A DNA stretch of 64,000 nucleotides. It comes from Paramoeba atlantica (Eukaryota; Protista; Discosea). The position numbers and the translations under genes were made by a program. Each line of letters starts with the position of its first letter. The first letter of the stretch is position 1. Location: contig CDRNVI010000158.1 in the NCBI GenBank assembly GCA_977017575.1, positions 62,001-126,000 on the forward strand, in the 5' to 3' direction. Below, piece after piece: positions 16,690 through 61,931 of the stretch. The notes under the pieces are model-generated. The model saw only the letters and a program-made list of their open reading frames with translations. It searched no databases and was not told where the DNA came from.

Positions 16690-19109
16690 ATGTCAGAACT
16701 ATTACTTGAAGCTGTCGAAGAAGGGGATTGTGAGAAAGTGGACCAAATCCTTTTGAATCCAAAAGTGAGCATCAGTCGCCCTCCTCGCTGTCAGGTCTCC
16801 TCTTCTTTCTGAGTTTTGTTTTTATTATCTTTTTCGTTGCTGAGACAAAACGGAGAATAGGGAGGGATCACTCCTTTGATCAAAGCATGCCAAATAGAAG
16901 ACTTGAAAATGGTTTCTTTTTTAATCGATAAAGGAGCTTCTATGAAGAGTGTGACTGTGGTATCTCTGTTTTTCTACAAAATGTTCTTTTTTTTGGGGGA
17001 ACTGAATATCTTTATTTCTCCACAAAGGAGGGAGCAACTCCTTTGGTTGTCGCCTGTGAGCTTGGAAATATCGAACTTGCTGAACTTCTCTTGGAGAAAG
17101 GATCTCCTTTCTGTGTAAGTCCTGTTTGTACTTTCTTTTTCTCCGCCACTCCTTGCTTGGAAACAAACCCCTCTCTTTCAGATCAAAAAAAGTCCCCTGT
17201 GCACAGCCAGTAAACAAGGAAACATTGCATTAGCAAAGTTTTTGATTAAAAAGGGAGCAGAATTAAACCAAGCAAAAACGGTTCTTTCTCCCATTTCACA
17301 AAAATTACCTTTTTCTTGATGTTTCCCAATTGAATAGGGAGGGTTGACTCCTTTGTACATTGCTTGTTTGGATCATAATATAGAGATGATCGATCTTCTC
17401 GTTCGAAAAGGAGCAAACCCCACCTATCCTTCAAAGGTTCCATTTCTTCCATTTTTGGGGGGAGCGGTGTTTGTTAAAATAATGTGCTAGGATAAAATGA
17501 CACCGCTCCATTTGATGTGCTTAGAAGGGAATTTAAAAATTGGCAGAACTTCTGATGAACAAGGGGTCCATTGATAACATTGATGCGAAAAGAAAAGATG
17601 TTCTCTCTTCTCTTCAAAAAGCAAAAAAAAAAATGCCCCCTTACTGAGAACACATTCAAACAGGGAAATTCAAGTTTGCACTTAGCATGTGAAGAAGGAC
17701 ATTTAAATGTTGTTGCCTCATTAGTCGATCGAGGGGCATCCATGAATCTCCCAAACAAAGTGGTTTTCTCTTTCTTTTTGAGTCTCAATTGGACTTACTG
17801 AATATTGGATAATTAAGCGGGGTTTGACTCCATTTCACGTTGCAATTGGACAAGGACATGTGGATATTTTAACCCTTCTTGAACGAAAGGGAGCTTCGAT
17901 CCGAGTTCAGAGATCAGATGGCCTCATTCTCGCTTGCCAAAATAAACATATGGATGTTGTTTCTTATTTAATGGAGCATCGCAAAGAGGTTCGTGAAAAC
18001 GATGTGATTCTATGAAACTTCAAATTGAGCTAAAAAAGATGATTAGGAGCTAACTGTTGCCCCCCTTTATTTTGCAATCACTCATGGTGACATTGAGTTG
18101 GTTCGATTCTTAATTTCAAGGAATTGTCCTATCAACGGAGTGGACCAGGAATACATACGACTGCACTATATGGTAAAACACCATTTTCCAATTTGTTTCC
18201 TCTTTCTCACACTCTCATAAATTCAGTGTTCTTGGTCACCTTTGATCATGGCTTGTTCGCATTACAAGTTTCAAATCGCTGAATTATTATTGCAAAACGG
18301 AGCCCAACATACTTTTCAGCAATACAGCGCCCTTCATATTTGTTGTCGATCGACCGGTTTCGCTTTTCGGGTGATAAGGTGCTTAGTGGAACAGGGTGCG
18401 AATGTCAATGAGATATCTCAGGCTCAGGTAACTTGGCCAAATCCTCCTTACCGCTCTCCCAACCACTGATCCATTCCATTTCAAAACAGGATCTTACTCC
18501 TCTGATGTGTGTTTGCCTATCTCCATGCCAGGAAACACTCGAAAGAATCACTCTCTTGTTGAAAAGTGGCGCGAGGGTCAATGAAGCAAACGTGGTAATC
18601 TCTGATGTTTTCCCTTTTTGTGAGACATTAAATTCGTTGTTTTGACCAATGGTTTCTAACACAGACCGGACAAACCGCTCTCCATTTCGCTGCCCGGTTT
18701 AATAGCTTGGAAGTAATAAAACTCTTGTGTGAGAATTGGAATGCTGATCCTGACCTGAAAACCTCCCGAGTTTGTTGAATGAGAGAAGACTAAAATTCAC
18801 TCTTTTTGTCTTTGAAAAAGCAATTCATGATATTTTGCAGGGGCTCACGCCAGCTGATGAAAGTAATAGGGAGGGTGTAAAGAAATATTTAATGGTATCC
18901 CGACCTTTCTTTATCAGTTTTTCCTTTTCTCAAACTTTCAACAGGAATTCATTCGAATTGATGGTTCCATTAAACCTGCGAAAAGAACAGAAAATAAGAA
19001 GCTCGAACTGGGAGGAGAAGAGGAAGAGAGTAAAAAAAGAAAAAATCGAGATGAATCAGTTGTTTTTGGAGAAAACGAACCCAAAAAACCTCGATCAGAA
19101 ATTGATTGA
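16690..19109 (+). CDS. multi-exon ankyrin-repeat protein; apparent +1 frameshift at 17535-17539
   Basis: Repeated TPL(H/F/V)...G...(A/V)ELLL..GA units, roughly one repeat per exon; last exon EFIRIDGSIKPAKR...KKRK...KKPRSEID*. Confidence 0.82.
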
Positions 19110-19203
19110 ATTGAGTTCAAGTCAGGTTCCTTTTCCCCAACTATTTTCTGATTTTCGTGATGATTCTGTTTGAAGTGAAGATCAGGTTGGGGAGAGCGAA
19201 ATT

Positions 19204-21969
19204 TCATTTCTCTCTTTTTTCTCTTTTCTTGGAACATAAGATCCGATAACGCATACACCGCTCTTCATCGGGCCAAGACATGAAACCTCTGAAATAATCA
19301 AATAAGTATTGAAAAAATTGATTGAAAAGAAACAAAAAAAAGGAACTAAAAAAAACCTCAGAGAAGATGGAGAGAGATCATGGAGGGAGAGATCTGTTTG
19401 TGGGGAGACTTCACCAATGATACATAAATCCTTAAATGTCGCATCAGATTGCCAATTGACATCTCTAAAATAATTATATTAACCCAAAAAAAACAAACAA
19501 TAAACTTTTTGATTTTGAAAAATGAAAGAAAGAAAAGAAAAAGAAAACTGCGCGGCTTTGTGGAGTTGATGGACACAAAAATGGAGACTTTGATTCATTG
19601 ATTTCTTAATCATTTCAAACTCTTTCATTGGTTGAGTTGTTTTTGCGCCAAGGACATCTTCAAAAAGAGATTTCCAATTACTTCGAAGATGTGGGCTTTC
19701 ACATTCTCGATATGATTTACATGGTTTGCATGTCCCTCCCTTTCGAATGAGAAAGAAAGATTCAAAAAAATACAAATTAAAATTTAAAAAAGAAGTAAAT
19801 CAAACATTATATTGTGTGTTGAGTGGACCTTTCGCCTGCAAAAACGAAATGAGAAGAAAGTCAATAAAAGAGAAGAGGGAGAGAAATCAAACGCTATGTT
19901 CAAGCCGCAGTACACAAAATGGAAAAGTGCCCTATCAAAAAGAAAAAACAACAAAAAACAACTGTTTTTCAGCCAAAAAAAAATGAAAAGAAAACAGAAA
20001 AAACGAATTAAAATTCTTTACTTTCTTTACACACAAGCCTAAGGCAGCCAACTCTAATTGTAATGATTCTTCACTATTTTTTGGTGCCCTATTCATTTTG
20101 TTTTATTAATATTTGATTTGGGAAAGAAAGAGAAATGAGAGAGAGAGAGAGAACAAGGCAGGCTTTGCCAATTGAAGAGACTCAAAACGATTATTGGCGA
20201 GAAGGACCGATTTTCTCCTGTTTTTCAAATTTAAATTTTTTCTTGAAATTAAATAATTTAAATACACAACAAACAAATGGTAAAAGCATTTTAAATACAC
20301 AAACAACATACGCACAAGAAGAAGAAGAAAAAGAAAAAGAAGAAGAAGACAAACCCTCCCATTAATAATCGATCATTCCAACCTCCATAGGTCCATTGTT
20401 TTGGTAAATAAACACATCCATCTGAGCGTTTATTCTCTCTTTTTAGAAGGAAGAAGAAGAAAGGAAGAAAAAGGAAGAAGAAAAGAAAGAAAAGAGGAAA
20501 ATGTGTGGGAAAAAAGAAAAAGAACCTTGAAATGAGAGATCAAAATTTGGAAGAGATTTCCAAAGTCCATCAACTCGACTTCTGAGAACTAAAAAAGAAA
20601 AATCAATTTGGGAAAAAAAAATGAGAAATTGATTAAAAAGAGAAATAGATTTTTTGAACAAACTTGAATCATATCGAAAACCTTCTTTTTCTTCCTCTTC
20701 TAAAATCATCTAAAAAATCATAAAAAAAACTCATTTAACAGCATTCAAAAGAAACGAGAACAAAAATGAAAGGAAGAAAAAAAGGGGAGAAAGAGAAAGA
20801 GAAAGAGAGAGAAAGGAAAAGAGAGAGAAAGAAGAGAGAGAGAGAGAAACCGTATTACAAGAAAGAGTCAAATTAAACAAGGCATAAATTCCATCACTCC
20901 CCGAGACAGCATTTACAGGCATTAAAATATCTTGAACTATTTCTTTTGTTTAATTATTTATTTATTTTATTTTCTTTTCTTTTATTTTCTTTTCTTTTAT
21001 ATTTTAGATTTTTTTTATTCTTATTTCTCAAGGAAAATGAAATCAAAAAAAAAACAAAAAGAGAAAAGAGAAGAGAAAAAGAAGAACTTGGAGAGAAATG
21101 AGAAGGGTATTGAATAGGCATTTTAATGGAAACAAGGCGAGTTTTTTGAGATTGGAGTTCTTTATTTAATATTTCGATTTGTTTTGAAAGAAGAATCAAC
21201 TTGAAAAAAAGAAGAGAAATGGATTAAATTATGATTTAGAAAGAAAGGAAAAGAAAAGAAAAGAAAAGAAGAAAAATAGAAAAATAGAAAAATAGAAAAA
21301 TAGAAAATCAAAAAAGAAAAAAGAAAAAGAAGAAAGAAAACCAAAAAAAAAACCTTGAATGAATCATGATTTAAAAAAGAAGAAATAAATAAATCAACTC
21401 TCTTTGATTGTTGAGCAACTCTTTTAATCAGAAAATGAACCAATCCATAAACTAAAACAATAAAAACAATTTAATAAAAACAATTTAATAAAAACTATTT
21501 TAACCAAAAAAAAAATGATGATTTGAATAATTTAATCATTTAGTAATTTAATAATTAATAATTTAATAATTTAATAATTGAAGAAGAACTCTTGATTATT
21601 TCTTGGAATAAAAAGAAAAAGAAGAAAAAGAAGAAAAAGAAGAAAAAGAAGAAAAAGAAGAACAAGAAGAAAAAGAAGAAAAAGAAGAAGAAAGAAAGAA
21701 AGAAAGAAAAGAATGAAAACCAGTGAGATCAAGTGAACGAAGTTCCCCCATCAAACAAACTGCCACAACTGGTTCTAGAAAATAGAAAAGAGAAAGAGAG
21801 AAGAGAAAAGAAAAAGGAGAAAAGAATGAAAAGAGAAGAGAAAAAAATTCAAAAAAAAAAAAAAGAAAACAAAACCTTTTCTCACATTTTTTCGAACTTT
21901 TGAAAAAAGAAAAGAAGGAAAAAACAAAACAAAAAAGAAAAAGAAAAAGAAAACAAAATTTCTTCTCAT
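19204..21969 (-). CDS. same secreted family, paralogue 3
   Basis: VVAVCLMGELRSLDLTG, RVDLFISSFLNHDSFK, RSRVDGLW, GGWNDRLLMG, GGTCKPC, RDVNWQSD, RGFMSWPD; long A/T-rich introns. Confidence 0.68.
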
Positions 21970-22011
21970 CAAAAAGAGAAAGAAAGAGAGAAAAAAAGAG
22001 AAAAAAAAACT

Positions 22012-23197: not shown

Positions 23198-23268
23198 AGG
23201 TCCTACCGAGGATCGAACTCGGGGCACGGGAATCAAAACCCCGTATGTTACCACTACACCATAGAACC
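23198..23268 (-). tRNA. tRNA-Gln(TTG)
   Basis: GGTTCTA/TAGGACC acceptor, CGGGG-TTTTGAT-TCCCG anticodon arm, TTCGATC T-loop. Confidence 0.93.
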
Positions 23269-27381: not shown

Positions 27382-28786
27382 CTTATTGAATTCGTAGTCT
27401 TTGAAGAAAAAAATGAGTTGGGGCTTCTGAAAAAAGAATGTCAAGAAAATAGAACGAAAGAAAAAGAAAGAAAAGAAAGAGAAATCTCGAAAGAATAGTA
27501 TTTAAAAACAAAAGAAGAAAGAGAATTATTCGAGGGGTCACCTGAAATTTTCCAACATCGATTACAAAAGAAAAGAAAAGAAAGAAAAGAATAAAAAGAA
27601 AGAAAGAAAGAAAGAAAAGAAAGAAAAGAATAGAAAAAAAAATTTAAAAAATTGAAGAAATAATAGTGGGGACCTGAAATTTTTCAACGAAAAGAAAAAA
27701 GAAGAAAGAAAAGAAAGAAAGAAAAGAAAGGAAAGAAAAGAAAGAAAATAAACTCAAAAAAATAGGAAGAAATAATAGTGGGGGGACCTGAAATTTTGCA
27801 ATTGATTTCGAGTTCTGAATCTTCTCAAAGAGAATATGGTTGTAATACTATTGCTCAGTGTGCTGATACTCCTGGTTTCTCTTTTCTTTTCTTTTGTTTT
27901 GTTTTATTTATTTATTATTTATTTTATTTTATTTTATTTTATTTTTATTTATTTTATTATTTTATTATTTTATTTATTTCATGTTGTAATACTATTGCTC
28001 AGTGTGCTGGTACTCCTAGTTTCTCTTTTGTTTTGTTTTGTTTTATTTTATTTTATTTTATTTTTATTTTATTTTATTTATTTTTTTTATTTATTTATTT
28101 CATGTTGTAATACTATTGCTCAGTGTGTTGATACTCCTGGTTTCTCTTTTCTTTTGTTTTGTTTTATTTATTATTTATTCTTTATTTTATTTTATTTTAT
28201 TTATTTATTCATGTTGGAATACTATCGCTCAATGTATTTTTATTTTCAGAGATTCGAGATTATTTGTTAAAAAATGGAGCTCTGAAAGCTGTTGTTGGTA
28301 AACTAGCTGATCCAGAACCACATGTACCTATTTTCTTTCTTTTAAAAACAAAGAAAATTAAAAAGAAAAATTCAGAAAAATAAAAAGAAACAAAATAGAA
28401 ATTAAGAACAAAAAATAAAAATAAATAAATAATAAATAATAAATAAATAATAAATAAATAAATAAATAAATAAATAAACAGGTTCGAATCGCCGCTCTGG
28501 GAGCACTTCGGAATCTGTGTATTACAATTGGAGAAGAAAGACATTTTTTAGAACAATTGCTTCTTCTTCAACCAATCCCTCTTCTTTCGAAAATTGCTTT
28601 TGATTCTCTTTCTTCTTCTTCTTCTCTTCCTTCTTCTTCTTCTTCTTCTTCTCTCTCTCAAAGTCAGATGAATCAATTGATGATTGAGAGTTCTTTTTTT
28701 ATTTTGTTGTATCTTTCTGAGCAGAAAGAAGAGGCCACTGTCTCTATTGCTGATCCACAAAGAGGTTTATTATTTATTTATTGAAT

Positions 28787-28833
<47 letters not shown>

Positions 28834-31800
28834 TTTTATTTATTTATATTATTTCTTATCATTCTGAGATTATTATTGTGGAAGGGAAAGAAAAAGAGAC
28901 TAAATTTAAAAAAATATCATTAATTTTAATCATTAATATCACAAAGATTAAATTTTTAAGTTCCTCAAAAAAAATAAAAAAAAAATAAAAATAAATTTTA
29001 AAAAAAATATAAAAATAAAAAAATAAATAAATAATAAATTTAAATAATAAATATATTATTAAAGGTCTAATAATTGGGTTGGTTGAATGTTTGGGGAGTG
29101 ATCATTTCTCTCTTTCTGTTCGTGTTGCTGCTGCAAAGCTTCTCCAAACTCTTTCAGGTTTTTTTTTTGTTTCTTTTTTTTATTTTTATTTTTATTTTTA
29201 TTGTCATTTTTGGTTTTGTATTTTTTGGTTTTGTGTTTTGTTTTTCTTTCTTTTGTCATTTTTTGGAAATTTTCTTTTTGCATATTTTAAAATAGGATAC
29301 AATTAACATTTTAATTTTTCAGATGCAAACGAGTTAGTAATTTCCCAAATCCAAAACCAACAAACAATTGAAAGAATCCAATCAATTGCAAATCACCCAA
29401 TTCCAAATACAATCTTTTCATTTGACGCCCCTCTTTCTTCTGGGGAGAGTGGAGTTGGGAAATTGTATCTTTTGAAGGCTCTTTGTTCTGGTTTTTTTTG
29501 TTTCTTTTCTATTTTTTTTTTCTTTTTTAGTTTTTTTTAGTTTGTTTTTTTGTTTTTTGTTTGTTGGTTTTTTCAAAAAATAAAAACATTTATTTACATT
29601 TCTCACCAAAAAAAAAAAAAAGAAAACATTCAAACCCATTCCAATCAACCAGAACCTAACCCCCACAAAAACAACAGGAATCCTGCTCAACATCCTCCCA
29701 GAAAACACAACATCCGAAACAACAACCCAAACAATTCTCCCAAACTTGTTCAACATTTTAGCAAAACATTCTGGGTCATATTTCGAACAAATTGGACCGA
29801 TTTTGCAACACTTAAATCGTCTGAAAGATGAGAATTCGGGGGTTGAAAAAAAAATGGAGGATGTTGGAGGGGGGGAAGAGAGAGGAGAGAGAGAGGGGGG
29901 AGAGAGAGAAGAGAGAGAGGGGGGAGAGAGAGAGGAGAGAGAGGGGGGAGAGAGAGAGGAGAGAGAGGGGGGAGAGATGGTGGAAGGGGAGGAGGGGGAG
30001 AGAGGAGGGGGGGGGAGTGAGTTGGAAAGAATTGAGGAGGTTTTTGAAGAGAGGAAGGGGGAATGGGAATCGATTTGCCAAGCACAAGAAATCTCTCTTG
30101 AAATATTGACCAATCTTTTTTCTATGGAAGAGAGAGAAGAAGAAGAAGAAGAAGATTTGGAGATGGCGAAGGAGAGAATGAGATCTTTTCCGTTTGTTGG
30201 GGAGATACAGAAAGTTGTTTGTGGTTTGATGGATTATTTGAAACCTCATTTGGAGTTTGTTTCTCCTCATTTTGCTCCTCATGTTCAGTGGGCTTTTCCT
30301 TTGCTTTCTCAGCTTCATTTGAAGTAATTCTTTTTTCTTTTTTCTTTTTTCTTTTTTTACTTTATTTTTTGATATTTTATCTGATTTCATTTATATATTC
30401 AAAAAATTTTCAGTCTTTTATTCCAAGTTTTGATTTTTAAATTTACTTTTAAAATTTAAAATTCTTTCTCTTCTTTTGATTGAAAAAAAAACTCAAAAAC
30501 AGAACTCTAAATTGCCTCTCAAATGTCTTTGAAGTGATTCGAATCCCCGAACTCGTCAATTTCTCCTCTTCAGACATTTGGAAAGTGGTTCATAGGATTT
30601 TAAATGATGCTGGTTTGCTCTCTCTTCCTTTCTCTTCCTCCTTTCTTCTCTCCCTTCTCTCTTCTTTTTTACCTAAAAATATAAAATAATTCCAACACCC
30701 AAAAATACAAATCAAAAATAAAATCAAATTTTTCTTTCCACTCCAATTTTTTATTCAAATATTAACAAATTTTATTCTAAATTATAGTACTTGCAAATGA
30801 CATCGCACGAGTTGGAGGAGCATGTAGTTGTGAGTGGTCTCTTTTGAGAATGTGTGTTCGGTTTTTTTCTGTCCATGGAGTTGGAGAAGGTTGGTTTATT
30901 ATTATTATTATTATTATTTATTATTATTGGGGGTGAGAAGAAAGAAAGAGAGAGGAGGGAGTGTGAAAGGAGAAGAAGGGATTTTGAGAATAAAAAAGAA
31001 AGAGAAGAGAAGACGGAAAGAAAAAGGGAAATTGTTCTCATTTTTCTTTCTCTTTTTTGAAGCAAATGTGCATCGAATTGTCCCGCCAGGAGATGTAAAA
31101 CAATTAATGGAATTTGTCAAACAATTTATTGAAGAAGAAGAAATTGTTGTTTCGATTCTTGGGATTTTTGGGTGTGTTTGTAAATTTGATTGTCGAACTT
31201 TCAGGTATTCCATTTTTCATTTCTTTTTTGTTTGTATTTTCTTCTTTGTGCTGAAAAATGAAAGATTTGATTTGAATTATTCTTTTTTCAATTCTCTTGA
31301 AATCCATTTTTTAAAAAACAACAACTAAAATTATTCTCTTTTCATCCACTTTTTTTCTTCTTTACCCCTCTCTTCTCTTCTCTTCTCTTCTCTTCTCTTC
31401 AATTCTCTCCTCAGCCAAACATACAGCCACACACACCAAATCCCAATCCACGAAAATGAAGGAATAGAAGCATTGAGTGGAGTGAGTAATGTTGTATTTG
31501 GTGTATTGATGTCAGATCGTCCAAATGTTGTTGTTGAGGTTGATGTTTTTTTGATTTATTTTTTTTCATTTTTTTTTTGATTTTTTTTTCATTTTTTTTT
31601 TCTTTTTGTTTTATTCATTCGCATAATCAATTTTTCAAAAACTCAATTTCAAATTCTTTTTTCAATAAACACTTTTTCATTCTAATTTTAAAAAAAATAA
31701 TTTCTTCTTTAAAAAAGGGTCTCAACTCTCTCTTTGAAATCTATGGAGAAGATTACCATGATGAATTGTTCAAATCCACCAACGCAACAAAGAAACTCTC

Positions 31801-36009: not shown

Positions 36010-36255
36010 TTTTTCAAACCAAAAACCAAAAACCCAAAACCAAAAAAAACCAAAAACGAAAAAACAAAAAAAATCCGATTTGGGAGGTATTTTTGGAACA
36101 CTGTTATAATTTATTGGGGGTGACTATTTATCAAAATTGAAGAATCAAAATGCCGAAAAAATAAATTCTCTTTTTCTAAAAAAGCGCCCTATTTTTCTGT
36201 TTGTCTTTTTTTTTTGTTTTTTCTGCCATTTCGTTTTTTGTTTGGGGGATGTTGG

Positions 36256-37014
36256 ATGGATTGGGAAGGGATTTGGACTGAGATTGTTGAGACGGGTGAT
36301 CTTGTTGGCCTCTCAGGCTTCTTCTCCTCAAAAGAAGAGAAAGTTTTTCTTTCATCCTTTTGATTTATTTTCCATCTTTCCTCTTTTGATGGTTTGGGTA
36401 ATTTCCTCAGAGAGGCTTCGATATCAACCAACCAATTGGCGAACCCCGCTCCCCTCCACTTCATCGACTACACTCGATCGATTATGTTCAATTATTATTG
36501 GAGAATGGTGCAAATATTGATTGCAAAATCACAGAAGAGGAAAGCACCCCACTACACTTTGCATGTCAAACAAAAAAAGTTGACATTGCCCTCTTTTTGA
36601 TTTCAAAAGGAGCTGGTGTGAACGTGAAAAATGGATTTGGGAAAACTCCTCTTCATTACGCTGCTGAAAATGACCTTCTCAGGTTTTCTTTTCTTCCAAC
36701 AAAAAGCAAGAATAACCCCTTCTGAAATTATCCTCTTTTTTTGTTCACTCTCTATCAGAGTCGCAGAAGAGCTGCTTTCTCATGGAGCTGAGATTGATGC
36801 CAACTCAGACTGGATGCAGCGAACACCTCTTCATCTCGCTGCTGAATATGATGCATATAGCACTGCACTAATCCTGTTAAATTATGGAGCAGACAAGTCT
36901 GCCCGAAACCTGTGGGACCAGACACCTGCCGAAAGTTCGAAGAATTTGAAACTCAAGAAGGAAATCGAGGAGTTTGTGGATGTGATGCAAATTAAACCAG
37001 CAAAACAACAGTAA
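36256..37014 (+). CDS. small ankyrin-repeat protein (3 exons)
   Basis: TPLHFAC, KTPLHYAA, RTPLHLAA, QTPAE; ends EEFVDVMQIKPAKQQ*. Confidence 0.85.
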
Positions 37015-37204
37015 GAAGAGGTTTTTTTGGCTGTTGGTTTTTATTGTGTTCTCTCTACCTTGCAACCTTCATCGCCTGATAAAGAGTAAAGAATGGATAT
37101 CCAGAAAGGAGCGAACATAATATTCAGGGGGTGTATTCTCACCTCCAATAAGAGGACACTCTGCTCCATTTCTTTTTGTTTTTTTAAATGGTGTTGCTGG
37201 TCAT

Positions 37205-39020
37205 TCACGTCAGAAATAAGTCATAAGCCTCTTCAATAGCTCGTTGGCGTATAGACTGTTGAAAAAAAAAAAGGTAAATCCAAATGATATTTTCTTCCAA
37301 TAAAACAAATTCTTCAACCTGAGATTCCCAACCCGCAGCATTTTGTTCTTTTTTTGTGATAACTTCTGACTATAATAAAACAAATTAGATGCCTTCTTTT
37401 TCTCTTTAGATACCAAACATCAAACAAAGAAAACAGACCCGAGGAGGGGGCATTTTCCCAAGGGGCAAAGGTTTGACCAGTTGAGGACCTTGAGCAGCAG
37501 GAAGATTCTGTCAAAAAGGTCTTTTCTAAGATGAAGAAAGAGAAAAGAGAAAAGAAACATAATGAGAGAAAGAAACAAAACTGATTTTGGCATTGGTCGA
37601 TAAGACACACCACTGAATGTTGGATTGGAAAGTGGAGCAGAGAGAGGTGCCACTGGTGTTGTTGCTAAAGGTTTGGAAACTGAAGGTTTGATGAGTTTTT
37701 CTGGTTTTTTTAATGGGCGGAATTTTTTTGGTTTATATGTCGATCCAGTTTCCTACGAATGATAGAGTTTAAATTTACTCAAATTTTTTGAAAAAAAAAT
37801 GAGAAGAAAGAAAAACCATGGCTCGAATTTGTGCTTCTTTTTCTTTGACAAGATGCTCCTGGAGCTGGACAAGAATTTTTTAAAAAAAGAAGAAAGAAGG
37901 AAAATAAGTGAGCACTCAGACCTTCGTTTTGTTTTCTTTCTCCCAAGTCTCCATCTCTTCCACTTTTTGTCGTTCCTACGAGGTTAAAACCATGATTGTC
38001 AGAATTCAATAAAAAGAAGAAAAAGGAAAGAAAAAGAAAACTTTCTCTTCTTGCTTTTCATATTCATCCTCATCTTGCTGCCTCTTTCTAAAAGAAAAAA
38101 AGAAATGAGATGAGTTTCATTTTTTTAAAAAAGAGAAACAAAAAAATGAAAATTTACATGTTATTCCGGGTGATTAGCGCTTCATTTTGGAGTCGATATC
38201 GTCTCATTTGGGCGGCTGTGGCATCCACATCCACTTGATTAATCATACGTTGACAAATATCCTCTACCTATTTTTGAGAGAGAGAGACGAGAGATGAGAG
38301 AAAGAAACCACAGAGAGAGAGAGGAAATGAAAAAATGAAAAAAAACCTCTTCTAGATAGTCATTATAGGCACGGAGAGAATTGAAATCAACTCTTTTCAT
38401 ATTATAAATTAAATAGACTCTCTTTCGAATTGTACATTCTCTCACAAGACCAGATGATTCTCCTCCATCTTCCTAAATTTTTACATGTTGTAAGAAAAAA
38501 CAAGAAAACAAAAAAGTGAAATCAAAAAAATAAAAAAAAAAAATGAAAAAATAACGTTTGTAAAATTCTCTTTTGTGAGAGTTTGTCGACAGTTTGGGGC
38601 AAGACAAACAAAAGTGCTGTTCAAAAAGAAAAAGAAAAAGAGATTCGTTAAAAGGAAAAGAAATAAAAAGAGAAAAGAGAGGAGTGACCTTTGCTTTTGA
38701 GGAAGTAAAGTATTATAACAACCCTCACAGCTTTCAGAGAAAGAAAGAGAAAGAGAAAGTTAAAGAACAAGTGAGATGTGAGTTTCGATTCTGTTCCCTC
38801 AAAACACAAAAAAAGAGAAAAGAAAAAGTCATACTAAAAATGATCACAAATCGAAATGTATAGTTTCATATTTGGAGTTAAGTGTTTCTATCAAAAACCA
38901 TTTTATGAGAAAGAGAGAGAGAAGAGAAGTGAAAAAAGGAGAAGGAAGGAAAGAAGAAAGAGAAAGAGAATTTAGAGAGACTTGATTTTTGCATTTTGTG
39001 CATTGTTCCAACCCTTCCAT
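37205..39020 (-). CDS. MNAT1: CDK-activating kinase assembly factor MAT1 (RING, TFIIH)
   Basis: CTKC...PNMKLYISICDH...CEGC...CRQTL RING; IRKRVYLIYN...FNSLRAYNDYLEEVED; C-terminal QRAIEEAY. Confidence 0.85.
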
Positions 39021-39407
39021 CACTTTCAATACACTTCAAAAAGACAAGAATAAAGGGGAAAGAAGAAGAGAAGAGAAAACACAAAATCCTTCTTTTTTGT
39101 TTTCCCTTCTTCCTTCCTCTCTCTCTCCGAAAGAGAAGAAAGAAAAAGAACCAAACAGCGAAACGAAAGGAAAAAAAAAAAAAACTGAAGAAAATCTCTT
39201 CCGATTCCGGTTCCGGTTCCGATTCCGGTTCCGAATTTTTTTCAAGTGGGACACCTCACTCAAACAGGAAAAAAACAGAGAAAAAGTGTCCTCTTATTTA
39301 GCGCCCCAAAAAAGCCAATCCTTTGGAGTTGTCGTCTCGTTCTTTTTCTTTTTTGCGTTTTCTTTTTTGTTGTGTGTCTGCTTTTCTGATGTTTCTCTGT
39401 TGGTTGA

Positions 39408-40690
39408 ATGTCTTTGGGGTCTCTCGTCTCTCTCGAATCGAAAAAAAAATATGAGTTGATTGAACAACTGGGAACTGAAATTTGGAAAGCGAGGAATGTT
39501 TCTTCTGGAAGAGAAAGAGAAGAAGATGAGGTTGTTGCGATGCGGTTCTTTCCTTATCTTCTTCTGTCAACGGAGGAAAAGATAAAACCGGATCTGATGA
39601 TGACAATCGCTCGTGGAAAAGAGAAACAATATCACCCATCTCTCCTTCGATACCGTGAACTCGCAACTTTCGAAAAAATATTGTGTCTCGTGATGGAGTA
39701 TTGTCAAGGAGGGTCCGTGAAAGAGATAATCCAAATCCTCAACCGTACTTTAACAGAAAAAGAATGTTCTCTCATCATTCGAGAAGTTTTAATTGCGCTC
39801 TTGTTTCTCCATTCCCAAGAAAAAAGAAACCACGAACGGATTCAATCTTCATCCATTTTAATTGATTCGAAAGGGAGAGTAAAACTCGACGAATCTGGTT
39901 TTAGAACGAAAATCGTTTCTCTTCAACAACAATATTCTTCATGTGGATTGTGGATGTCCCCAGAAGCTGTACGGGGTGAACCTTGTTGTGATATTTGGTC
40001 TTTGGGAATAACTGTGATCGAGATGATGAATGGTGCTCCTCCTTTTGCTGAGTTTTCTTTCTTCGAAGCAGTCAAGAAAGTTGAGAGGTTTTTTTTATTC
40101 TTTTTTTTTTTTTGAGAAAAGAAGACGTAAATTGTTTTTTAATTCTTTTAGAAGTATTTTTCACTGAATACCCTCTCTTTTTCTCTTCCAGTGGTGAATC
40201 ACGAAGTGGCCAAAGAAAGGAAAACCCAAAGTGGTCAAAAGAGCTCAATGATTTCGTCAATAAGTGCACCCAAAAAGAACCAAAGGATCGAGGAACTCCA
40301 GCAGAGTTATTAAAACACCCCTTTATCCAACAATTCGACAAAGAAGAAGATCAGCTGAACCGCTCTTCTTCTCCCTTGGTTGAACTTATTGAAGCCACAA
40401 ACTTTGTGATCGAAGGAGCTGGGAGTCGTCTCGTGGCACTGAAGGGAATTCCCCCAATTAAAGAAGAAGTAATTTTCTCTTTTTCATTTGTTATTAAAAT
40501 GGGCCGGTAGCTCAGCGGTAGAGCGCTCGGCAGCAGACCGAGAGGTCCCTGGTTCGAATCCAGTGTTGGCCCTAACCTTTTAATTCTTTTTGTTCTTTTT
40601 GTTCTTTTTGTTCTTTGTTTCATGTTTTTCTTTTCTTTTTTCACGAAAACTGAACAGGAAGGAGCCAACATCAAGCCAGCTCAAAAATAA
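39408..40690 (+). CDS. STE20/MST-like kinase-fold protein, predicted pseudokinase
   Basis: LVMEYCQGGSV, WMSPE, DIWSLGITVIEMMNGAPP, WSKELNDFVNKCTQKEPKDR...HPF; catalytic motifs degenerate; last 11-codon exon EGANIKPAQK*. Confidence 0.8.
40501..40573 (+). tRNA. tRNA-Cys(GCA), intronic, atypical (possibly pseudo)
   Basis: GGGCCGG/TTGGCCC acceptor, U discriminator, CTCGG-CAGCAGA-CCGAG anticodon arm (A at position 33), one extra base in the T-stem 3' strand. Confidence 0.8.
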
Positions 40691-41124
40691 GAATATTTTA
40701 TGTCGCCATTTTTTTTTCTTGGTGGAATATCCCGGGAGAAAGAACGAGAGTCAATGAATAATCTTGAAAGGTTTTTTCTCTCTTTTTGAGTTCTTTTTTT
40801 ACTTTAAGACAAAAAGAAAGAAAGGATGGCAAATTATGATTTGCACGTCAGACTGAATTTCTTGTGGAAAAACTCGCTTTGCTGATCTTTCAGTGTTTTA
40901 AGAAGAAAGATTTTTGTTCTTCTCTGAGATTTGGTTTTAATAATTTATTTACAGTGTGTGTGTTGCGTATGGTGTCGGTTCAACAAAAGTCAAACTCAAT
41001 TTCTTTGAAAAATATAATAAATAAGAATACTACAATAGAACTGTTCTCTGCGAATCTCTTAAATCCACTCCAACAAATCACCTCCGTTTGAGAGAAAACG
41101 AAGAAGTCACTCTCAAGAGGAAGA

Positions 41125-47998: not shown

Positions 47999-49342
47999 TT
48001 ACTCGCCCATGAGCTGCTCCATGGCTTGGTCAAGATCATCATTCACAAGATCCAGAACACTGTTCAGAACATCAACATCAAATCCCATTGGGGTCAAAAC
48101 TTCCAAAGCTCGAGCTCGTTGTTCAGAGACAGGTTTCTCATTTTTCTTGGCCTCCTCTTCCGCAGCAGCTGCTCTCTCGGCTTCTTCTTGGGCTTTTTTG
48201 GCCTCTTCTTCAGCTTTCTGGGCCTCTTTTTCAGCTTTTCGTGCTGCTTCTTCTAACAATCTGGCACGTTCTTCCAATTCCTTGGCCTCCTCCTCAAGTC
48301 TTCGAGCTTCTTCCAAGGCTTTAAGAGCTTCTTCTTCAGCTTTTCGAGCAGCTTCGACCAATTTCTGAGCTTCTTGTTCCTTTTGAATTAAGAAGAATTG
48401 TTCAAAATCTTCATCAAGATCCTCGATAGTAACAGTCGATTGAGCTTTTTTGGGAGAATCAGAAGGAGGGAGAGTCTGGTTCGACTTGTTCTTCAACCAT
48501 TCATCAAATTGAGGAGAGTTTCGAAGATTCTTGAAATCAGTATCACTCAAAATAGCTCCAAAATCAGGTTCACCAAAGGAAACATAACGGTCCAAAGAAG
48601 CAAAAGCTTCATCCAAAGATCCAACACGAGAGAGAGCGCACGCCAAATTATAAGCAACAATTCGATCTCCTGGAGAAATTTTAGCACAATCTTGAAGGAG
48701 AGAAACAGATTCAGCTTCGCTAAGCTTATCATCGTGATCCAAAAGATCAAGTGCGTATTGGTGAATGGTAGTCGAGAAGAGAGCAAGATCGATATCCAAC
48801 AATAAATCTCCACTTCCTTGAGGGCAAGGAACAAATTTGACTGCTCCAGTGAGCCAAGGAGGAAGGTTTCCACCAGAGGAAGTGATCAAACGCTCGACAA
48901 TTTGGGGAACTGTTTCTTGAATGTGAGCTTGCTCGTCTGGGGTTGCTGAAACTTCTTTCCCATCAGATTCATAAAAGTACTCAGTAGACACAGTAAATTT
49001 GATGACTTCATCTCCTTCAGAAGACTCGATTTTGATCTCCCCAGACTCAACAACATTCTCTTTCTTAACTGATTCAGAGAACTGAACAAAAAGTTTAAAA
49101 GGCCAAGCCTTCACAGACGAAAGAGCTTCATCCCACTCCAACTGGGATCCTAAAGTGATATAATCCCCATCTTCATCGCACCATTGAACAACAAAACTCA
49201 AATCAGGTGATTGGGGAAAAAGAGAGCGAAGTAATCCCAAGAAATTATCCCATGTTGGAGAAGAGGATGTTCGGATCCTTCGAATGAAATCAACATCAGA
49301 AGGATCGGGAGATTTCAAAAAATACAGTTTAAACGACGACAT
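47999..49342 (-). CDS. PB1 + TPR-like + coiled coil + UBA protein, intronless
   Basis: PB1 acidic motif WCDEDGDYITLGSQLEWDEAL; AYNLACALS...AILSDTDFKNLR; C-terminal LTPMGFD...NDDLDQAMEQL. Confidence 0.82.
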   Translation of the reverse strand: MSSFKLYFLKSPDPSDVDFIRRIRTSSSPTWDNFLGLLRSLFPQSPDLSFVVQWCDEDGDYITLGSQLEWDEALSSVKAWPFKLFVQFSESVKKENVVESGEIKIESSEGDEVIKFTVSTEYFYESDGKEVSATPDEQAHIQETVPQIVERLITSSGGNLPPWLTGAVKFVPCPQGSGDLLLDIDLALFSTTIHQYALDLLDHDDKLSEAESVSLLQDCAKISPGDRIVAYNLACALSRVGSLDEAFASLDRYVSFGEPDFGAILSDTDFKNLRNSPQFDEWLKNKSNQTLPPSDSPKKAQSTVTIEDLDEDFEQFFLIQKEQEAQKLVEAARKAEEEALKALEEARRLEEEAKELEERARLLEEAARKAEKEAQKAEEEAKKAQEEAERAAAAEEEAKKNEKPVSEQRARALEVLTPMGFDVDVLNSVLDLVNDDLDQAMEQLMGE

Positions 49343-49737
49343 TTTTGTGAGATTTTCAAAAAAGAAAAAACAAAAACAAAAATCAAAAACCAAAACAAAA
49401 GAAAACAAAAAGAGAGAGAGAAAGCAAGAGAGAGAAAGGGTTGCGAAAAGAGAGAAAGAAAAAACAAGAGACGGTTTCGGTGAAATAATAAAATGGCTTT
49501 GTCATCACCAATTCGGTGAAGGTCTTCCATTAATTTTTTGAACATTTAAAAAGTTCTTTTTCGATTTTTTAAATACCCAAATTTCGAACCGACTTTTTCG
49601 AACGTCGAAAATATGTTTCTGGACATTTTCCTGATTTCTGAAAACTCGACGAAACGAAAAAACAACGCCGACTTTTTTTTGTTTTTTTTTCTTTGTGGTC
49701 TTTCCTCAAAAACTTGACCCCCCCCCAAAAAAACACC

Positions 49738-58753: not shown

Positions 58754-59257
58754 AAAGAGAGGAAAACATCGAAACCCATAAGGGGGCATTTCAACGGAAT
58801 GCACAGCGCCGGTTATCTGTTGCCCTTATTGCAAGCATGGCCAGGAAATATGATCTCAATCTGCCAAGGACTCTCCCTGTGATCCTCCCAGCATTGTGGT
58901 CTCGGCCTCTCTTTCAACTCCTCCAGCTTTTTCTTTCAGTCTCTCTCCACTTCGCTCGATAAACCAGCCACGGCAGGCTCTTCGCTCTAGGATGTCGAGT
59001 CTCTGAGTGCGCCCCTCAACCAAACTGTGCCCATCTCTTTCGACTCAGTCCCAGTTAACAAAATTCAAGAAATAAAAAAAGAAATAAAAAAATCGAGAAC
59101 CTGACAGAAAAAGGGAGTTCGATTCTCTGAGGAGTTTCTTTTTTTCATTTTTTAAGAGACTTTTTTAGCAACTTTTTGCTCTTTTTTTTTGGTGACGACG
59201 CTTTTTTTTGTGTTGTTTGCCTTCTTTTGTTTGTGTTTTGTGGTTCACATCAAAAGT

Positions 59258-60454
59258 ATGACAAGCCATCTCCCACCTGGACTTTTGGCCTTGTTCGTGG
59301 CCCGGCCTCCAATTGATTATGTTGAACCTCTCAAGAAAAGAAAAATGCCTCCTGTGGATGGGATTGCCAAGTATCTCGAGAGGTGTGGTGAAGGAGAACA
59401 ACGCGAGTACGAGTACACAGGTGGGTATGAAAGCCGACTTGTGAAAAGACGGAAGAAAACGGAGGAGTTAAAACAAAAGAATGAAGAGAAAGCTCAACAA
59501 GGAATCAAAGAACATGATCCAAATTCAGATCCGAACGTTGATGGGGATGGGTACAAAACAATCTTTGTTGGGAGGTTGCCTTACGAGATCACAGAACCTG
59601 CTCTTCGTCGTGAGTTCGAAGTTTATGGTCCTGTTCGAAAGGTTACTTTGATCTATGATCGTGAAGGAAAACCAAGAGGCTATGGCTTTATTGAGTTTGA
59701 GAGAGAAAGAGACATGAAAGCTGCTTATGAGACTGCAGATGGTCGCCGTCTTCTTGGTCGCCGAATTTTGGTCGATGTTGAACGTGGACGAACAGTTAAA
59801 AATTGGGTTCCTCGTCGTTATGCAGGAGGTCTCGGAAACCCTCGTCCTGAACTTCTCCCAAAAGTTGGTAAGAAAAGGTATTTCTTTTTTTTTTCTTTCT
59901 TTTCAGTTTTCCCCTTCCTCTTCCCCTCCTCTCTTCCCCTTTCTTCTCTTTTTCCTTCTTTCCCCCATTCCCTTCCCTTTTTTTCTTGAGATTGCAGTTC
60001 CTTGAACATTTATCTTTTTTTTTTTATATAAAAAAGTGGATCATCGAGTCAACAACCTGCAAAAACTCGTCCATCCCAAGAACCAAGACATGTACCGGAG
60101 CAGCCATATCGAGATGATAGAGGAGGAAGAGATCGGTATGGTGGTGGTGGTGGTGGTGGTGGCCAAGGTGGTGGCCATGGTGGTGGCCATGGTGGCGGCA
60201 GTTATGGTGGGGATCGTCGTGGGAATGATCGTCGTGGAGATGATCGCCGAGGCGGATATGGTGGTGGTGGAGATCGTGGGTATGGGGGTGGTGGTGATCG
60301 AAGTTATGGTGGTGGCGGTGGTGGTGATCGAAATCGATACAATTCTGGAGGTGGAGGAGGTGGAGGTGGTGGAGGTGGAGGAGGTGATCGAAGAAGAAAC
60401 CAAGGGGCTGACGAAGGTTACGAAAACTTCCGTGATCGACGACGAAAGTATTAG
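59258..60454 (+). CDS. SNRNP70: U1 snRNP 70 kDa
   Basis: MTSHLPPGLLALFVARPP, RRM KTIFVGRL...RGYGFIEF, VDVERGRTVKNWVPRR..GGLG, RGG/RD-rich tail after one intron. Confidence 0.96.
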
Positions 60455-60802
60455 ATTTTCAAGTGGTGGTGTTTTTTTTTTGAGGTATGTTATTTGTGAT
60501 AGGTGTATTTTGGTAGGTGTGTTGTTTGTTTTTCTTTTTCCTTTTTTTTTTTGGTTTTTTCTTTGAGAGAAAATAGATTTTTCACTTTTTCTTTTGGGGT
60601 ACTTCTGAAAATTTCTGGTAGGTAGCTGTTAAGGTGAGGTTTTCTTTCTTTTGATGAGAGATGAAGAAAGACAAAGTGAATCTAAGGTTGGATTGAACCC
60701 AATAAAAAAACTTTTTAAAAAAGAGAAAGTGTGTCTTGGAAATTTTGGGGTTTTTTTTTCTTTGTCAAAGAAGAGAGTTTTGTCTTTTTGCTGTGTTCTG
60801 AA

Positions 60803-60924
60803 CCCGCTGATCGTCCACTCTCACCATCTACTTTGTTCACCATCTACTTTTTTCACCATCTACTACTTGAATAACGAAACAAGAGAGTGATGAGAAGAGA
60901 GGGTGAGAGTGGACGATCAGCGGG
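60803..60924. repeat. perfect 23-bp inverted repeat with 76-nt spacer
   Basis: CCCGCTGATCGTCCACTCTCACC (60803-60825) and its exact reverse complement (60902-60924); the spacer has three TCACCATCTACT copies. Confidence 0.92.
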
Positions 60925-61291
60925 CTTTCCGCCGCGCTGTTGCCGTCATTCCTGCAGCTTCGTCGTCTTCTCCAGCATTGAGAACTTCTGATCCAGACCC
61001 ACTCGCTCCTGTTGTAAGAGGAGTAGAAGTAGCGATTGCCAATAAGGGTGATGTTGTGGTTTGAAAAGAAGAATAAGAGGGAGCGGAAGTGGTAAACTTT
61101 TGTGAGAATGTTGTACTGGTGGAAAGGCTTTGGCTGGTGATGGATGAGGAGGTTTTTGATTGGAAAGTAATTCCTCCGACCGTCATGGATGATTGAAGAG
61201 CTCGAAGTTGAGACCCATGAACTAAATTTGGGCGAAATGAAGAGGTGACGATTCCTCTTCGCATCCCGTTCAAAGCCAAACGACAAGCCAT
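60917..61291 (-). CDS. small Ser/Thr-rich protein with mitochondrial-presequence-like N-terminus
   Basis: ATG start MACRLALNGMRRGIVTSSFRPNL (Arg/Ser/Thr-rich, no acidic residues); intronless; GC above flanks. Confidence 0.55.
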   Translation of the reverse strand: MACRLALNGMRRGIVTSSFRPNLVHGSQLRALQSSMTVGGITFQSKTSSSITSQSLSTSTTFSQKFTTSAPSYSSFQTTTSPLLAIATSTPLTTGASGSGSEVLNAGEDDEAAGMTATARRKAR

Positions 61292-61323
61292 GATTTGTTT
61301 CTCTCAGGTTTTTTTGAAACCGA

Positions 61324-61355
<32 letters not shown>

Positions 61356-61541
61356 ACGAGAGAACTTTTTTCAAAACCGAGAAAAGATCTTTTTGATTTT
61401 TCGATTGTAGATAAATTCTTCCAAGAAAAAAATGGAAAGATAATTACTGAATTGGCTTGAATCATCTCGACCAAAAGGAATGACGATTGACTTGGGTTTG
61501 GGGGAGAAGGAATCATCCAAAATGGTATGGTAATTTTTTCT

Positions 61542-61931
61542 TTATGTCCTCTTTGCAGGTTTTAAAGGAAAACTAGAAAGAGAGAGGATCATGGCATCGA
61601 ACCATTCATCTCTCTCTCCTTTGTTTCGAGCGCGAAAATAATAACTGTGGTCTGTTTTGGATTTCACAGAAATATATTTTGGGTTCTTTCTTGCCTCAAC
61701 CTTTTCCACCTCATTTGGAGGTTTGTTCAAGAAGGAGCGAGGAAAAAAAAAAGAAGAAAAAAAGAATCAAACTGCAATATCAACCATGATTTCCCCGCCC
61801 CTCTCTCCATAGCAATAAATGTGACCATTTGCGACAACCACCCACGATGGCATCCTGTTCGCCAGGAATGACGAACTGGGGAGCATTACCAATGTTCCCT
61901 CTTTTTCACCAACCTCTCCAGGATCATCCAT
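61542..61931 (-). CDS. solo PH-domain protein (2 exons)
   Basis: EKEGTLVM...SWVVVANGHIYCY...YYFRARNKGERDEWFDAMI; ends FPLKPAKRT*. Confidence 0.78.

What the first reader, a model, noticed from the sequence alone, without database searches (positions are those of the whole stretch)
18969..61565. Shared C-terminal [I/L]KPA[K/Q] tag on four unrelated recognition-domain proteins: candidate undescribed docking/adaptor system
Seen in sequence: small ankyrin protein ends MQ-IKPAK-QQ* (36991-37014); STE20 pseudokinase ends AN-IKPAQ-K* on its own 11-codon last exon (40658-40690); solo PH protein ends FP-LKPAK-RT* (61542-61565, minus); the large ankyrin protein has DGS-IKPAK-RT at the start of its last exon (18969-18983), followed only by a basic NLS-like tail. 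I did not see the motif in the housekeeping genes. All four are catalytically empty binding modules (ANK, PH, dead kinase) plus the tag. Inference: this resembles substrate-adaptor logic (recognition domain plus a short recruiting motif, as in SOCS-box or p97 PIM proteins), or a shared degron or localisation signal. I know of no described function for it.
Basis: partly seen in the sequence, partly recalled or inferred. Interest (0 to 1): 0.78.

Follow-up and report, generated by a model that had tools for sequence, protein, structure and literature searches.

The report
Shared KPA tail on unrelated proteins
Four genes in this amoeba window (two ankyrin proteins, a dead kinase and a small PH-like protein) carry the same short peptide, hydrophobic-K-P-A-K/Q, at or near their ends; the recurrence is far beyond chance, matches no known end-signal, and most likely serves as a common docking handle whose reader is unknown.

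Summary
The four [I/L]KPA[K/Q] sites are at the stated coordinates. They are the only [ILVM]KPA[KRQ] matches in all six frames of the 64 kb window. Three lie 1-2 codons before a stop. In 300 dinucleotide shuffles the means were 0.30 hits in all and 0.037 near a stop; 4 and 3 were observed.

Conservation is at the protein level. Third codon positions vary and the flanking DNA cannot be aligned. Hand-built gene models have GT-AG introns in matching phases, including the 10-codon last exon of the kinase.

Pfam confirms the Ank and Pkinase domains and gives a weak PH match. The kinase lacks the VAIK lysine, the HRD aspartate, the catalytic-loop asparagine and an intact DFG.

"Four unrelated" is overstated. 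The two ankyrin proteins share a longer C-terminal module, so there are three independent families.

No regex for a known C-terminal signal fits all four tails, and no paper describes the tag. A second assembly of the same organism keeps three of the tags. No orthologues were found elsewhere.

The docking or adaptor reading is plausible but untested. This scan has found the same tag before on other DNA of this genome (s1-399680, s1-405722, s1-396105, s1-369949, s1-369832).

The parts
36256..37014 (+). Small ankyrin-repeat gene, three exons (36256-36342, 36411-36682, 36759-37014), about 206 aa
   Evidence: GT-AG introns with matching phases. Pfam Ank, Ank_2 and Ank_5 on exons 2 and 3. First exon and start codon chosen by eye.
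36991..37005 (+). Tag IKPAK, followed by QQ and a stop
   Evidence: Intact in the second assembly (L002 10196-10210).
39408..40690 (+). STE20-like pseudokinase gene, three exons (39408-40087, 40192-40468, 40658-40690), about 329 aa
   Evidence: Pkinase E=6.9e-26 on exon 1; exon 2 matches the end of the profile. Phases and GT-AG checked. Best named relatives are STK24/25/MST4 at 34-36% identity. Catalytic residues lost: VAIK to VAMR, HRD to HER, N to S, DFG to DES, no glycine loop.
40658..40690 (+). Terminal micro-exon EGAN-IKPAQ-K-stop (10 codons plus stop); the tag itself is at 40670-40684
   Evidence: Phase-0 acceptor AG at 40656-40657 after a pyrimidine tract; the donor at 40469 is also phase 0. 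Intact in the second assembly (L002 13883-13897). No read evidence here.
61542..61931 (-). Small stand-alone PH-like gene, two exons (61931-61773, 61709-61542), about 108 aa
   Evidence: Pfam PH E=0.0065 on exon 2 alone, below the gathering score. Exon 1 has the usual PH beta1-beta4 pattern by eye. An EF-hand gene starts about 260 bp away on the other strand, so there is no room for further upstream exons.
61551..61565 (-). Tag LKPAK, followed by RT and a stop
   Evidence: Intact in the second assembly (L005 16354-16368). Lies about 8 residues after the end of the PH profile match.
16669..19109 (+). Large multi-exon ankyrin-repeat gene. The last three exons were verified (18665-18769, 18841-18894, 18945-19109); the upstream exons are only sketched.
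   Evidence: ORF pieces with ankyrin repeats. Pfam Ank on 17782-18012 and 18221-18466. The last three exons are all phase 0 with GT-AG introns.
18969..18983 (+). Tag IKPAK inside the last exon, followed by RT and 39 further residues that include KKRK
   Evidence: Shares the upstream context KKx[IL]xEF[VI]x[VI] with the small ankyrin protein (read by eye).

Best explanation
The peptide hydrophobic-K-P-A-[K/Q] is a real short linear motif specific to this lineage and kept by selection on the protein. It is appended just after the last folded element of proteins that bind things but have no catalytic output of their own: ankyrin repeats, a PH-like domain and a dead STE20-like kinase. It most likely works as a docking handle. 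One common reader protein would bind the exposed tail and so connect many different recognition modules to one shared downstream machine or place. This is the same logic as adaptor motifs in unrelated receptor tails.

Shown here: the motif is non-random, conserved at the protein level, lies outside the domains, sits on non-catalytic carriers, and does not depend on a fixed distance from the C-terminus.

For: Only four matches in six frames, three of them next to a stop, against 0.30 and 0.037 expected.

The K, P and A codons differ at third positions (AAA/AAG; CCT/CCA; GCG/GCA/GCT) and the flanking DNA is unalignable, so it is neither a DNA repeat nor an RNA element.

The tags lie beyond the Pfam domain ends.

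The kinase has lost its catalytic residues.

The residues after the motif number 2, 1, 2 and 41, so the free carboxylate is not in a fixed register.

Two of the four tags sit on a separate phase-0 last exon, as expected for a portable module.

Three tags are unchanged in a second assembly that is 97-99% identical.

No known end-signal regex fits all four.

Earlier notes of this scan, not tested here, report the same tail on well over a hundred genes. These include GTPases without prenylation signals and an LRR module that ends either in a kinase or in the tag.
Against: No reader, complex or localisation is known.

There is no RNA evidence in this window for the terminal exons.

No orthologue outside this organism was found for the kinase, the small ankyrin protein or the PH protein (the large ankyrin gene was not searched), so long-term conservation of these particular tails is untested.

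The two ankyrin carriers are probably paralogous at their C-termini, so independent carriers in this window number three.

A five-residue motif is short for high-affinity binding on its own.

The pattern 'binding modules only' rests on four genes here.
Confidence: 0.5

Rival explanations
1. The tail is an address label. A transport or anchoring receptor reads it and brings the carriers to one compartment or surface. Candidates are a membrane (replacing a lipid anchor), the nucleus, or the kinetoplastid endosymbiont that Paramoeba species harbour.
For: It sits near the C-terminus like most short address signals. Earlier notes report it on Ras/Rab-like GTPases that lack prenylation signals (not tested here). 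Paramoeba's endosymbiont lies in, and ingests, host cytoplasm (PMC5601477).
Against: It fits no tested pattern for PTS1, KDEL, KKxx, CaaX or a classical NLS. The large ankyrin protein carries a separate KKRK after the tag, which argues against the tag itself being an NLS. No data link it to any compartment. That the organism is a Paramoeba rests on earlier notes only.
Confidence: 0.2
2. The tail is a substrate site. The invariant lysine after a hydrophobic residue is modified (acylated, methylated, or joined to a ubiquitin-like protein), or the tail is a processing signal for a peptidase or transpeptidase.
For: The layout hydrophobic-K-x-small resembles the SUMO consensus (hydrophobic-K-x-E) apart from the last position. 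The lysine is invariant in all four copies. A lipid on lysine would explain the replacement of prenylation signals reported in earlier notes (not tested here).
Against: The tag fails the SUMO regex; the single match is to LKKE upstream in the small ankyrin protein, not to the tag. No enzyme candidate exists. Nothing in the sequence can show a modification.
Confidence: 0.13
3. The tail is a shared degron that puts many signalling proteins under one ubiquitin ligase for co-ordinated turnover.
For: It is short, exposed and C-terminal, and lies on regulatory proteins.
Against: Known C-end degrons are read in fixed register with the carboxylate. Here the trailing residues differ (QQ, K, RT) and one copy is 41 residues from the end. 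None of the tested C-degron patterns match.
Confidence: 0.08
4. There is no common function: the recurrence is chance, paralogy, or a passively shuffled terminal exon.
For: The two ankyrin tails are probably related by descent. The motif and its flank classes were chosen after seeing the data.
Against: Shuffles never reach the observed counts, and the look-elsewhere simulation gave 0 of 20,000. Amino acids are kept while third codon positions and flanks have diverged. The kinase, the PH-like protein and the ankyrin proteins have different domain families (Pkinase, PH, Ank), their tail flanks cannot be aligned at the DNA level, and the last exons of the two ankyrin proteins gave no BLASTP alignment. 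No direct protein comparison between the three families was run.
Confidence: 0.05

Closest known systems
Docking motifs shared by unrelated receptor or adaptor tails, such as TRAF-binding motifs read by the TRAF-C/MATH domain (from established knowledge)
   Same: A 4-6 residue peptide outside any fold, present on proteins of unrelated families, connects different recognition modules to one common downstream reader.
   Different: The sequence is different. No MATH/TRAF or other reader has been identified here. This tag is strongly biased to the C-terminal end and is often on its own last exon.
The C-terminal WEF motif of the STE20-like pseudokinase STRAD-alpha, which docks into MO25 (from established knowledge)
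   Same: A catalytically dead STE20-family kinase carries a very short docking peptide at its extreme C-terminus. The window's pseudokinase has the same architecture.
   Different: The peptide here is IKPAQK, not WEF. The same peptide also sits on ankyrin and PH-like proteins, so it is not specific to kinases. MO25 binding was not tested.
Classical C-terminal address or modification signals: CaaX box, PTS1, KDEL, KKxx, PDZ ligands, C-end degrons
   Same: They are short, C-terminal, found on unrelated proteins and read by one machinery.
   Different: All of these are read in fixed register with the free C-terminus. The tag has 1, 2, 2 or 41 trailing residues and matches none of their patterns.
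The invariant CRGKA tail of Giardia variant surface proteins (from established knowledge)
   Same: A lineage-specific, invariant five-residue C-terminal peptide in a protist.
   Different: CRGKA belongs to one membrane-protein family and follows a transmembrane helix. The tag here is on soluble proteins of several families.
Class II SH3 ligands (PxxPx[KR])
   Same: The PH-like protein's tail FPLKPAK fits PxxPxK. The P-x-K half-site is present in three of the four tags; the kinase tag has Q in that place (IKPAQ).
   Different: The other three tags lack the first proline. Earlier notes report that A can replace the P elsewhere in the genome (not tested here), which an SH3 pocket would not tolerate.

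Membership tests
CaaX / Rab prenylation signals | Cysteine at position -4 (CaaX) or a CC/CxC end | tested here: not met
   No cysteine in any of the four tails.
PTS1 peroxisomal/glycosomal signal | [SAC..][KRH..][LM..] as the last three residues | tested here: not met
   The ends are KQQ, AQK, KRT and EID. The broad kinetoplastid PTS1 regex quoted in PMC5601477 matches none.
Dilysine ER retrieval (KKxx/KxKxx) and KDEL | Lysines at -3 and -4/-5, or a [KH]DEL end | tested here: not met
PDZ ligands, TPR EEVD, CAP-Gly EEY/F | Defined last 3-4 residues ending in a hydrophobic or aromatic residue with a free carboxylate | tested here: not met
C-end degrons (GG, RG, R-end, Rxx-end, EE, RxxG) | A specific residue at a fixed distance from the C-terminus | tested here: not met
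   No pattern matches. Trailing lengths are 1, 2, 2 and 41.
SUMO consensus site | Hydrophobic-K-x-[D/E] | tested here: not met
   The tag has A or K where the acidic residue should be. The one regex match is to LKKE upstream of the tag in the small ankyrin protein.
Classical monopartite NLS | K-[KR]-x-[KR] | tested here: not met
   The tag K-P-A-K fails. The large ankyrin tail has a separate KKRK downstream.
   No Pfam family of any kind matches the large ankyrin protein's last-exon ORF piece at E<=0.01. Only the domain families Ank and PH match the small ankyrin protein's last exon and the PH protein's last exon; Pkinase matches the kinase's second exon. The tails are 5-12 residues past the domains. 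The kinase's 10-codon tag exon is too short to scan.
Active STE20-group protein kinase (for the kinase carrier) | Glycine loop, VAIK lysine, HRD aspartate, catalytic-loop asparagine and DFG | tested here: not met
   Alignment with five active relatives shows VAMR, HER, S and DES at these sites and no GxGxxG. The fold itself is Pkinase, E=6.9e-26. It is therefore a pseudokinase.
PH domain (for the PH carrier) | A Pfam PH match at or above the gathering score | tested here: inconclusive
Exon 2 alone scores 17.4 bits (E=0.0065) against a cut-off of 25.1. Exon 1 gives no hit.
The genome-wide 'KPAK tail' set described in earlier notes of this scan | [ILV]-K-[PA]-A-[KRQ] within a few residues of the stop, often on its own last exon, on unrelated families | tested here: met
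   Three of the four sites meet it fully. The large ankyrin site meets the sequence but is 41 residues from the stop. The genome-wide set itself was not re-derived here.

The most novel reading that the evidence does not exclude
The tail is the address label of a eukaryote-in-eukaryote symbiosis. It would take host-encoded ankyrin, PH, GTPase and pseudokinase modules to the surface or interior of the Perkinsela endosymbiont, as the host's toolkit for controlling it. A close second is that the tail is the acceptor of a new lysine-directed lipid or protein modification that replaces prenylation.
Probability: 0.07. Interest if true: 0.95.

Novelty: new variant of a known kind. Interest (0 to 1): 0.68.

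Why it matters
If one short tail really plugs dozens to hundreds of unrelated recognition modules into one reader, it defines a previously unseen wiring principle of signalling in a group of amoebae. That group includes fish pathogens and hosts a unique eukaryotic endosymbiont. The tag's frequent placement on its own last exon would also be a clean natural example of function gained by shuffling of a terminal exon.

Tried and rejected
Read evidence. The look-up of sequencing runs listed one possible RNA run and four other runs. The Rfam scans were split at 37871 and 37909, and the local BLAST pieces avoided the stretch.

Orthologues. All three homologous-protein searches found nothing closer than 43% identity apart from ORFs of the same organism's ENA assembly. 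The queries were kinase exon 1, the last ORF of the small ankyrin gene, and the PH ORF. The large ankyrin gene was not searched.

Motif harvest.

Second assembly. I walked ENA contig ERZ24900291:ctg3818l. It confirms three tags. It ends at about window position 61.8 kb and differs structurally upstream of about 23.4 kb, so the large ankyrin gene is not on it. The 20 kb locus fetched there (L006), about half of it DNA absent from the window, holds no tag.

Ideas rejected:
- A DNA repeat, or a transposon-borne terminal exon: the flanks are unalignable.
- The poly(A)-signal variant ATTAAA: only two of the four sites have it.
- A WH2/thymosin-like LKKT motif: the regex fails, and the micro-exon tags have no preceding helix.
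- SH3 class II: only the PH tail fits.
- The Kap121 IK-NLS, the PP1 RVxF motif, and dibasic cleavage: each fails, or fits only two of the four.

Idea left open: that the large ankyrin tail arose by loss of a stop after KRT (PH reads ..AGG ACA TAA, the large ankyrin reads ..AGA ACA GAA). It could not be tested without orthologues.


Full report
**1. Observation**

- DGS-IKPAK-RT at 18969-18983 (+)
- MQ-IKPAK-QQ-stop at 36991-37014 (+)
- EGAN-IKPAQ-K-stop at 40658-40690 (+)
- FP-LKPAK-RT-stop at 61542-61565 (-)

A six-frame scan for [ILVM]KPA[KRQ] returns exactly these four sites and nothing else in 64 kb. Three are followed by 1-2 codons and a stop, and one by 41 codons. Relaxing the pattern to K[PAS]A or K.A adds only two matches, both in very short ORFs that are not plausible genes.

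**2. Chance**

Three hundred dinucleotide-preserving shuffles of the window give a mean of 0.30 matches (maximum 3). For matches within two codons of a stop the mean is 0.037 (maximum 1). No shuffle reaches the observed 4 and 3.

The motif was chosen after seeing the data, so I also simulated 32 random ten-residue tails with this window's coding composition. Some exact tripeptide recurs in three or more tails in 16% of trials. With a hydrophobic residue before it and K/R/Q after it, this happened in 0 of 20,000 trials. The flank classes were also chosen after the fact, but the margin is large.

**3. Protein level, not DNA or RNA**

An alignment of the four sites with 60 bases on each side shows conserved columns only at first and second codon positions of the motif. 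The codons used are:

| Residue | Codons in the four copies |
|---|---|
| I/L | ATT, ATT, ATC, TTA |
| K | AAA, AAA, AAG, AAA |
| P | CCT, CCA, CCA, CCT |
| A | GCG, GCA, GCT, GCA |

The flanks do not align. This excludes a dispersed DNA repeat, a transposon-borne exon of recent origin, and an RNA element. Only two sites contain ATTAAA, so a poly(A)-signal reading also fails.

**4. Gene models**

The models were built by hand and checked by script for GT-AG introns and phase.

| Gene | Strand | Exons | Size |
|---|---|---|---|
| Small ankyrin | + | 36256-36342, 36411-36682, 36759-37014 | about 206 aa |
| Pseudokinase | + | 39408-40087, 40192-40468, 40658-40690 | about 329 aa |
| PH-like | - | 61931-61773, 61709-61542 | about 108 aa |
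| Large ankyrin (last three exons) | + | 18665-18769, 18841-18894, 18945-19109 | all phase 0 |

In the kinase and the large ankyrin gene the tag lies on a separate last exon that is entered in phase 0. In the other two genes it is in the same exon as the end of the domain.

The last intron of the kinase gene (40469-40657) contains a tRNA-Cys gene on the same strand (ARAGORN; Rfam 40.2 bits). If that intron were retained, the protein would end untagged at 40511.

I could not test splicing with reads. The one run that may be RNA holds 32% of the sampled words of 36100-40750. That share is about what the exons alone would give, but it is a weak hint and not evidence.

**5. What the carriers are**

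- **Domains.** Pfam finds Ank families on both ankyrin genes. It finds Pkinase (E=6.9e-26) on kinase exon 1, and the end of the Pkinase profile on exon 2. It finds a sub-threshold PH match (E=0.0065) on the second PH exon.
- **Position of the tags.** In every case the profile match ends before the tag, so the tag is outside the fold. It lies about 8 residues past the PH match, about 25 past the last ankyrin repeat, and about 50 past the kinase domain.
- **The kinase is dead.** Its best named relatives are STK24/25/MST4 kinases at 34-36% identity. Aligned with five active relatives it has no glycine loop, VAMR for VAIK, HER for HRD, S for the catalytic-loop N, and DES for DFG.
- **'Four unrelated' is overstated.** Between the last 'TPA' of the final ankyrin repeat and the tag, both ankyrin proteins have 20-21 residues with the shared pattern KKx[IL]xEF[VI]x[VI] (KKEIEEFVDV and KKYLMEFIRI; read). 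BLASTP of the two last exons finds nothing, because in the large gene this stretch is split over two exons. I count three independent families.
- **Share of genes.** By my rough count the window holds about 30 genes, so about one gene in eight here carries the tag. The others carry no match. They include the GCFC, CRT-like, RBR/IBR, PB1, WDR75 and EF-hand ORFs scanned with Pfam, and the V-ATPase, EF1G/GST, ABC_tran and U1-70K genes labelled on the second assembly. The six-frame scan finds no match in any of them.

**6. Relatives**

Three searches of 5.8 billion proteins found no orthologue of the kinase, the small ankyrin protein or the PH protein (the large ankyrin gene was not searched). The only close hits are ORFs from an ENA assembly of what is clearly the same organism, ERZ24900291 contig ctg3818l.

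I walked that contig. From about window position 25.0 kb to its end near 61.8 kb it is collinear with the window at about 97-99% identity, and from 23.4 to 24.8 kb at about 95%. It keeps the ankyrin, kinase and PH tags letter for letter.

Upstream of about 23.4 kb it carries different genes (RING-B-box-NHL proteins), so the large ankyrin gene is not on it. The 20 kb locus fetched there (L006), about half of it DNA that the window lacks, holds no tag.

These carriers are therefore fast-evolving or lineage-specific. Their tails cannot yet be compared across species.

**7. Known signals and literature**

A panel of 24 patterns was run on the four tails:
- lipid-anchor signals: CaaX, Rab CC/CxC
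- compartment signals: PTS1, KDEL, KKxx, classical NLS, Kap121 IK-NLS
- free-carboxylate ligands: PDZ classes I-III, EEVD, EEY/F
- five classes of C-end degron
- the SUMO consensus site
- docking and cleavage motifs: SH3 classes I and II and one non-canonical SH3 pattern recalled from memory, RVxF, WH2, dibasic cleavage

None fits all four. PxxPxK fits only the PH tail. KP..[QK] fits two tails. KR is present in two.

The variable number of trailing residues (QQ, K, RT, or 41 residues) argues against any reader that measures from the free carboxylate.

Full-text searches found no description of such a tag. I searched for the peptide strings, and for Paramoeba/Neoparamoeba/Perkinsela together with C-terminal, motif, prenylation or host-encoded proteome. 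The Paramoeba genome paper searched only for standard signals (PMC5601477).

**8. Earlier notes of this scan**

The same tail has been reported several times on other pieces of this genome. Follow-ups state the following:
- well over a hundred genes carry it;
- it is often on its own tiny last exon;
- it is spliced in;
- it is conserved in another Paramoeba;
- it occurs on Ras/Rab-like GTPases without prenylation signals;
- one LRR module ends either in a kinase or in the tag.

I did not re-test these claims. They agree with what this window shows. The LRR swap gave me the idea that the tag stands in for a catalytic domain supplied in trans. That the organism is a Paramoeba also rests on those notes, not on a test here.

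If 'well over a hundred' is near the true total for a genome of some 50 Mb, four tagged genes in 64 kb would be a marked local excess. This is worth testing for chromosomal clustering, especially as the overlapping neighbour window also reports tagged genes just past 64 kb (s1-399770). It is an inference from unverified numbers.

**9. Mechanism**

My best reading (confidence about 0.5) is a docking handle. An exposed peptide with a hydrophobic anchor, an invariant K-P-A core and a basic or polar end is bound by one common reader.

For this reading:
- the tag lies outside the folds;
- the carriers are non-catalytic;
- the tag is portable on phase-0 terminal exons;
- it does not depend on the exact C-terminus.

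Against it:
- no reader is known;
- only three independent carriers were examined here;
- there is no RNA or cross-species support in this window.

Rivals:
- an address label, including the endosymbiont version: 0.2;
- a lysine modification or processing site: 0.13;
- a shared degron: 0.08;
- no function: 0.05.

An address label and a docking handle overlap, since an address is read by docking.

**10. Verdict**

The feature is a new short C-terminal tag of a familiar general kind, with an unknown reader and no description in the literature I could search. This window does not reveal the mechanism, and the scan had already met the tag elsewhere in the genome.

It adds clean examples:
- a dead STE20-like kinase with a ten-codon tag exon behind an intron that contains a tRNA gene;
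- a minimal PH-like protein with the tag only a few residues after its last helix;
- an ankyrin pair that shows the tag can travel with a longer C-terminal module, and can also sit 41 residues from the end.

Noticed in passing
window 40501-40573 (+): A tRNA-Cys(GCA) gene lies inside the last intron (40469-40657) of the pseudokinase gene, on the same strand, just upstream of the tag micro-exon. If the intron is retained, the protein ends untagged at 40511. Pol III transcription here might influence use of the tag exon.
   Followed up: partly
window 1-23400 versus ENA ERZ24900291:ctg3818l (L004, L006): A second public assembly of the same organism is collinear with the window at about 95-99% identity from about 23.4 kb to 61.8 kb. 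Upstream it carries RING-B-box-NHL (TRIM-like) genes and extra copies of the 22.9-24.4 kb segment, instead of the GCFC and large-ankyrin genes. This is either a structural haplotype difference or a mis-join in one of the assemblies.
   Followed up: partly
window 18969-19109 (+) and 61542-61565 (-): The PH tail ends ..KPAK-RT-stop (AGG ACA TAA). The large ankyrin tail reads ..KPAK-RT-E.. (AGA ACA GAA) and runs on for 39 more residues with an acidic run and KKRK. A lost stop codon would explain the one internal copy of the tag. This could not be tested without orthologues.
   Followed up: no
window 1-2760 (+): Long ORFs that look by eye like the integrase and reverse-transcriptase parts of a Ty1/copia-type retroelement run in from the window start. 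No Pfam scan was run on them.
   Followed up: no
window 48002-49501 (-): A single 500-codon ORF has a PB1 domain (Pfam) and, by eye, a UBA-like C-terminus. This is the p62/NBR1-type architecture of autophagy receptors.
   Followed up: partly
window 8087-8317 (+), 10511-10762 (-): Two ORF pieces on opposite strands share the word NDRFM[IM]G. They may be dispersed members of one unnamed gene family.
   Followed up: no
window 20400-22000 and 27500-29600: Two intergenic stretches of 27-28% G+C consist of purine-rich or T-rich microsatellites, plus two 112-144 bp tandem units at 27575-28206.
   Followed up: partly
window 61931-62192: The PH-like gene and the first of two tandem EF-hand genes (62192-63124 and 63329 onward, + strand) are divergently arranged with only about 260 bp between them.
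   Followed up: no
window 4297-4371 (-), 11822-11893 (+), 23198-23268 (-): Three further tRNA genes (Lys-CTT, Asp-GTC, Gln-TTG) are scattered between protein-coding genes. All were confirmed by Rfam.
   Followed up: yes
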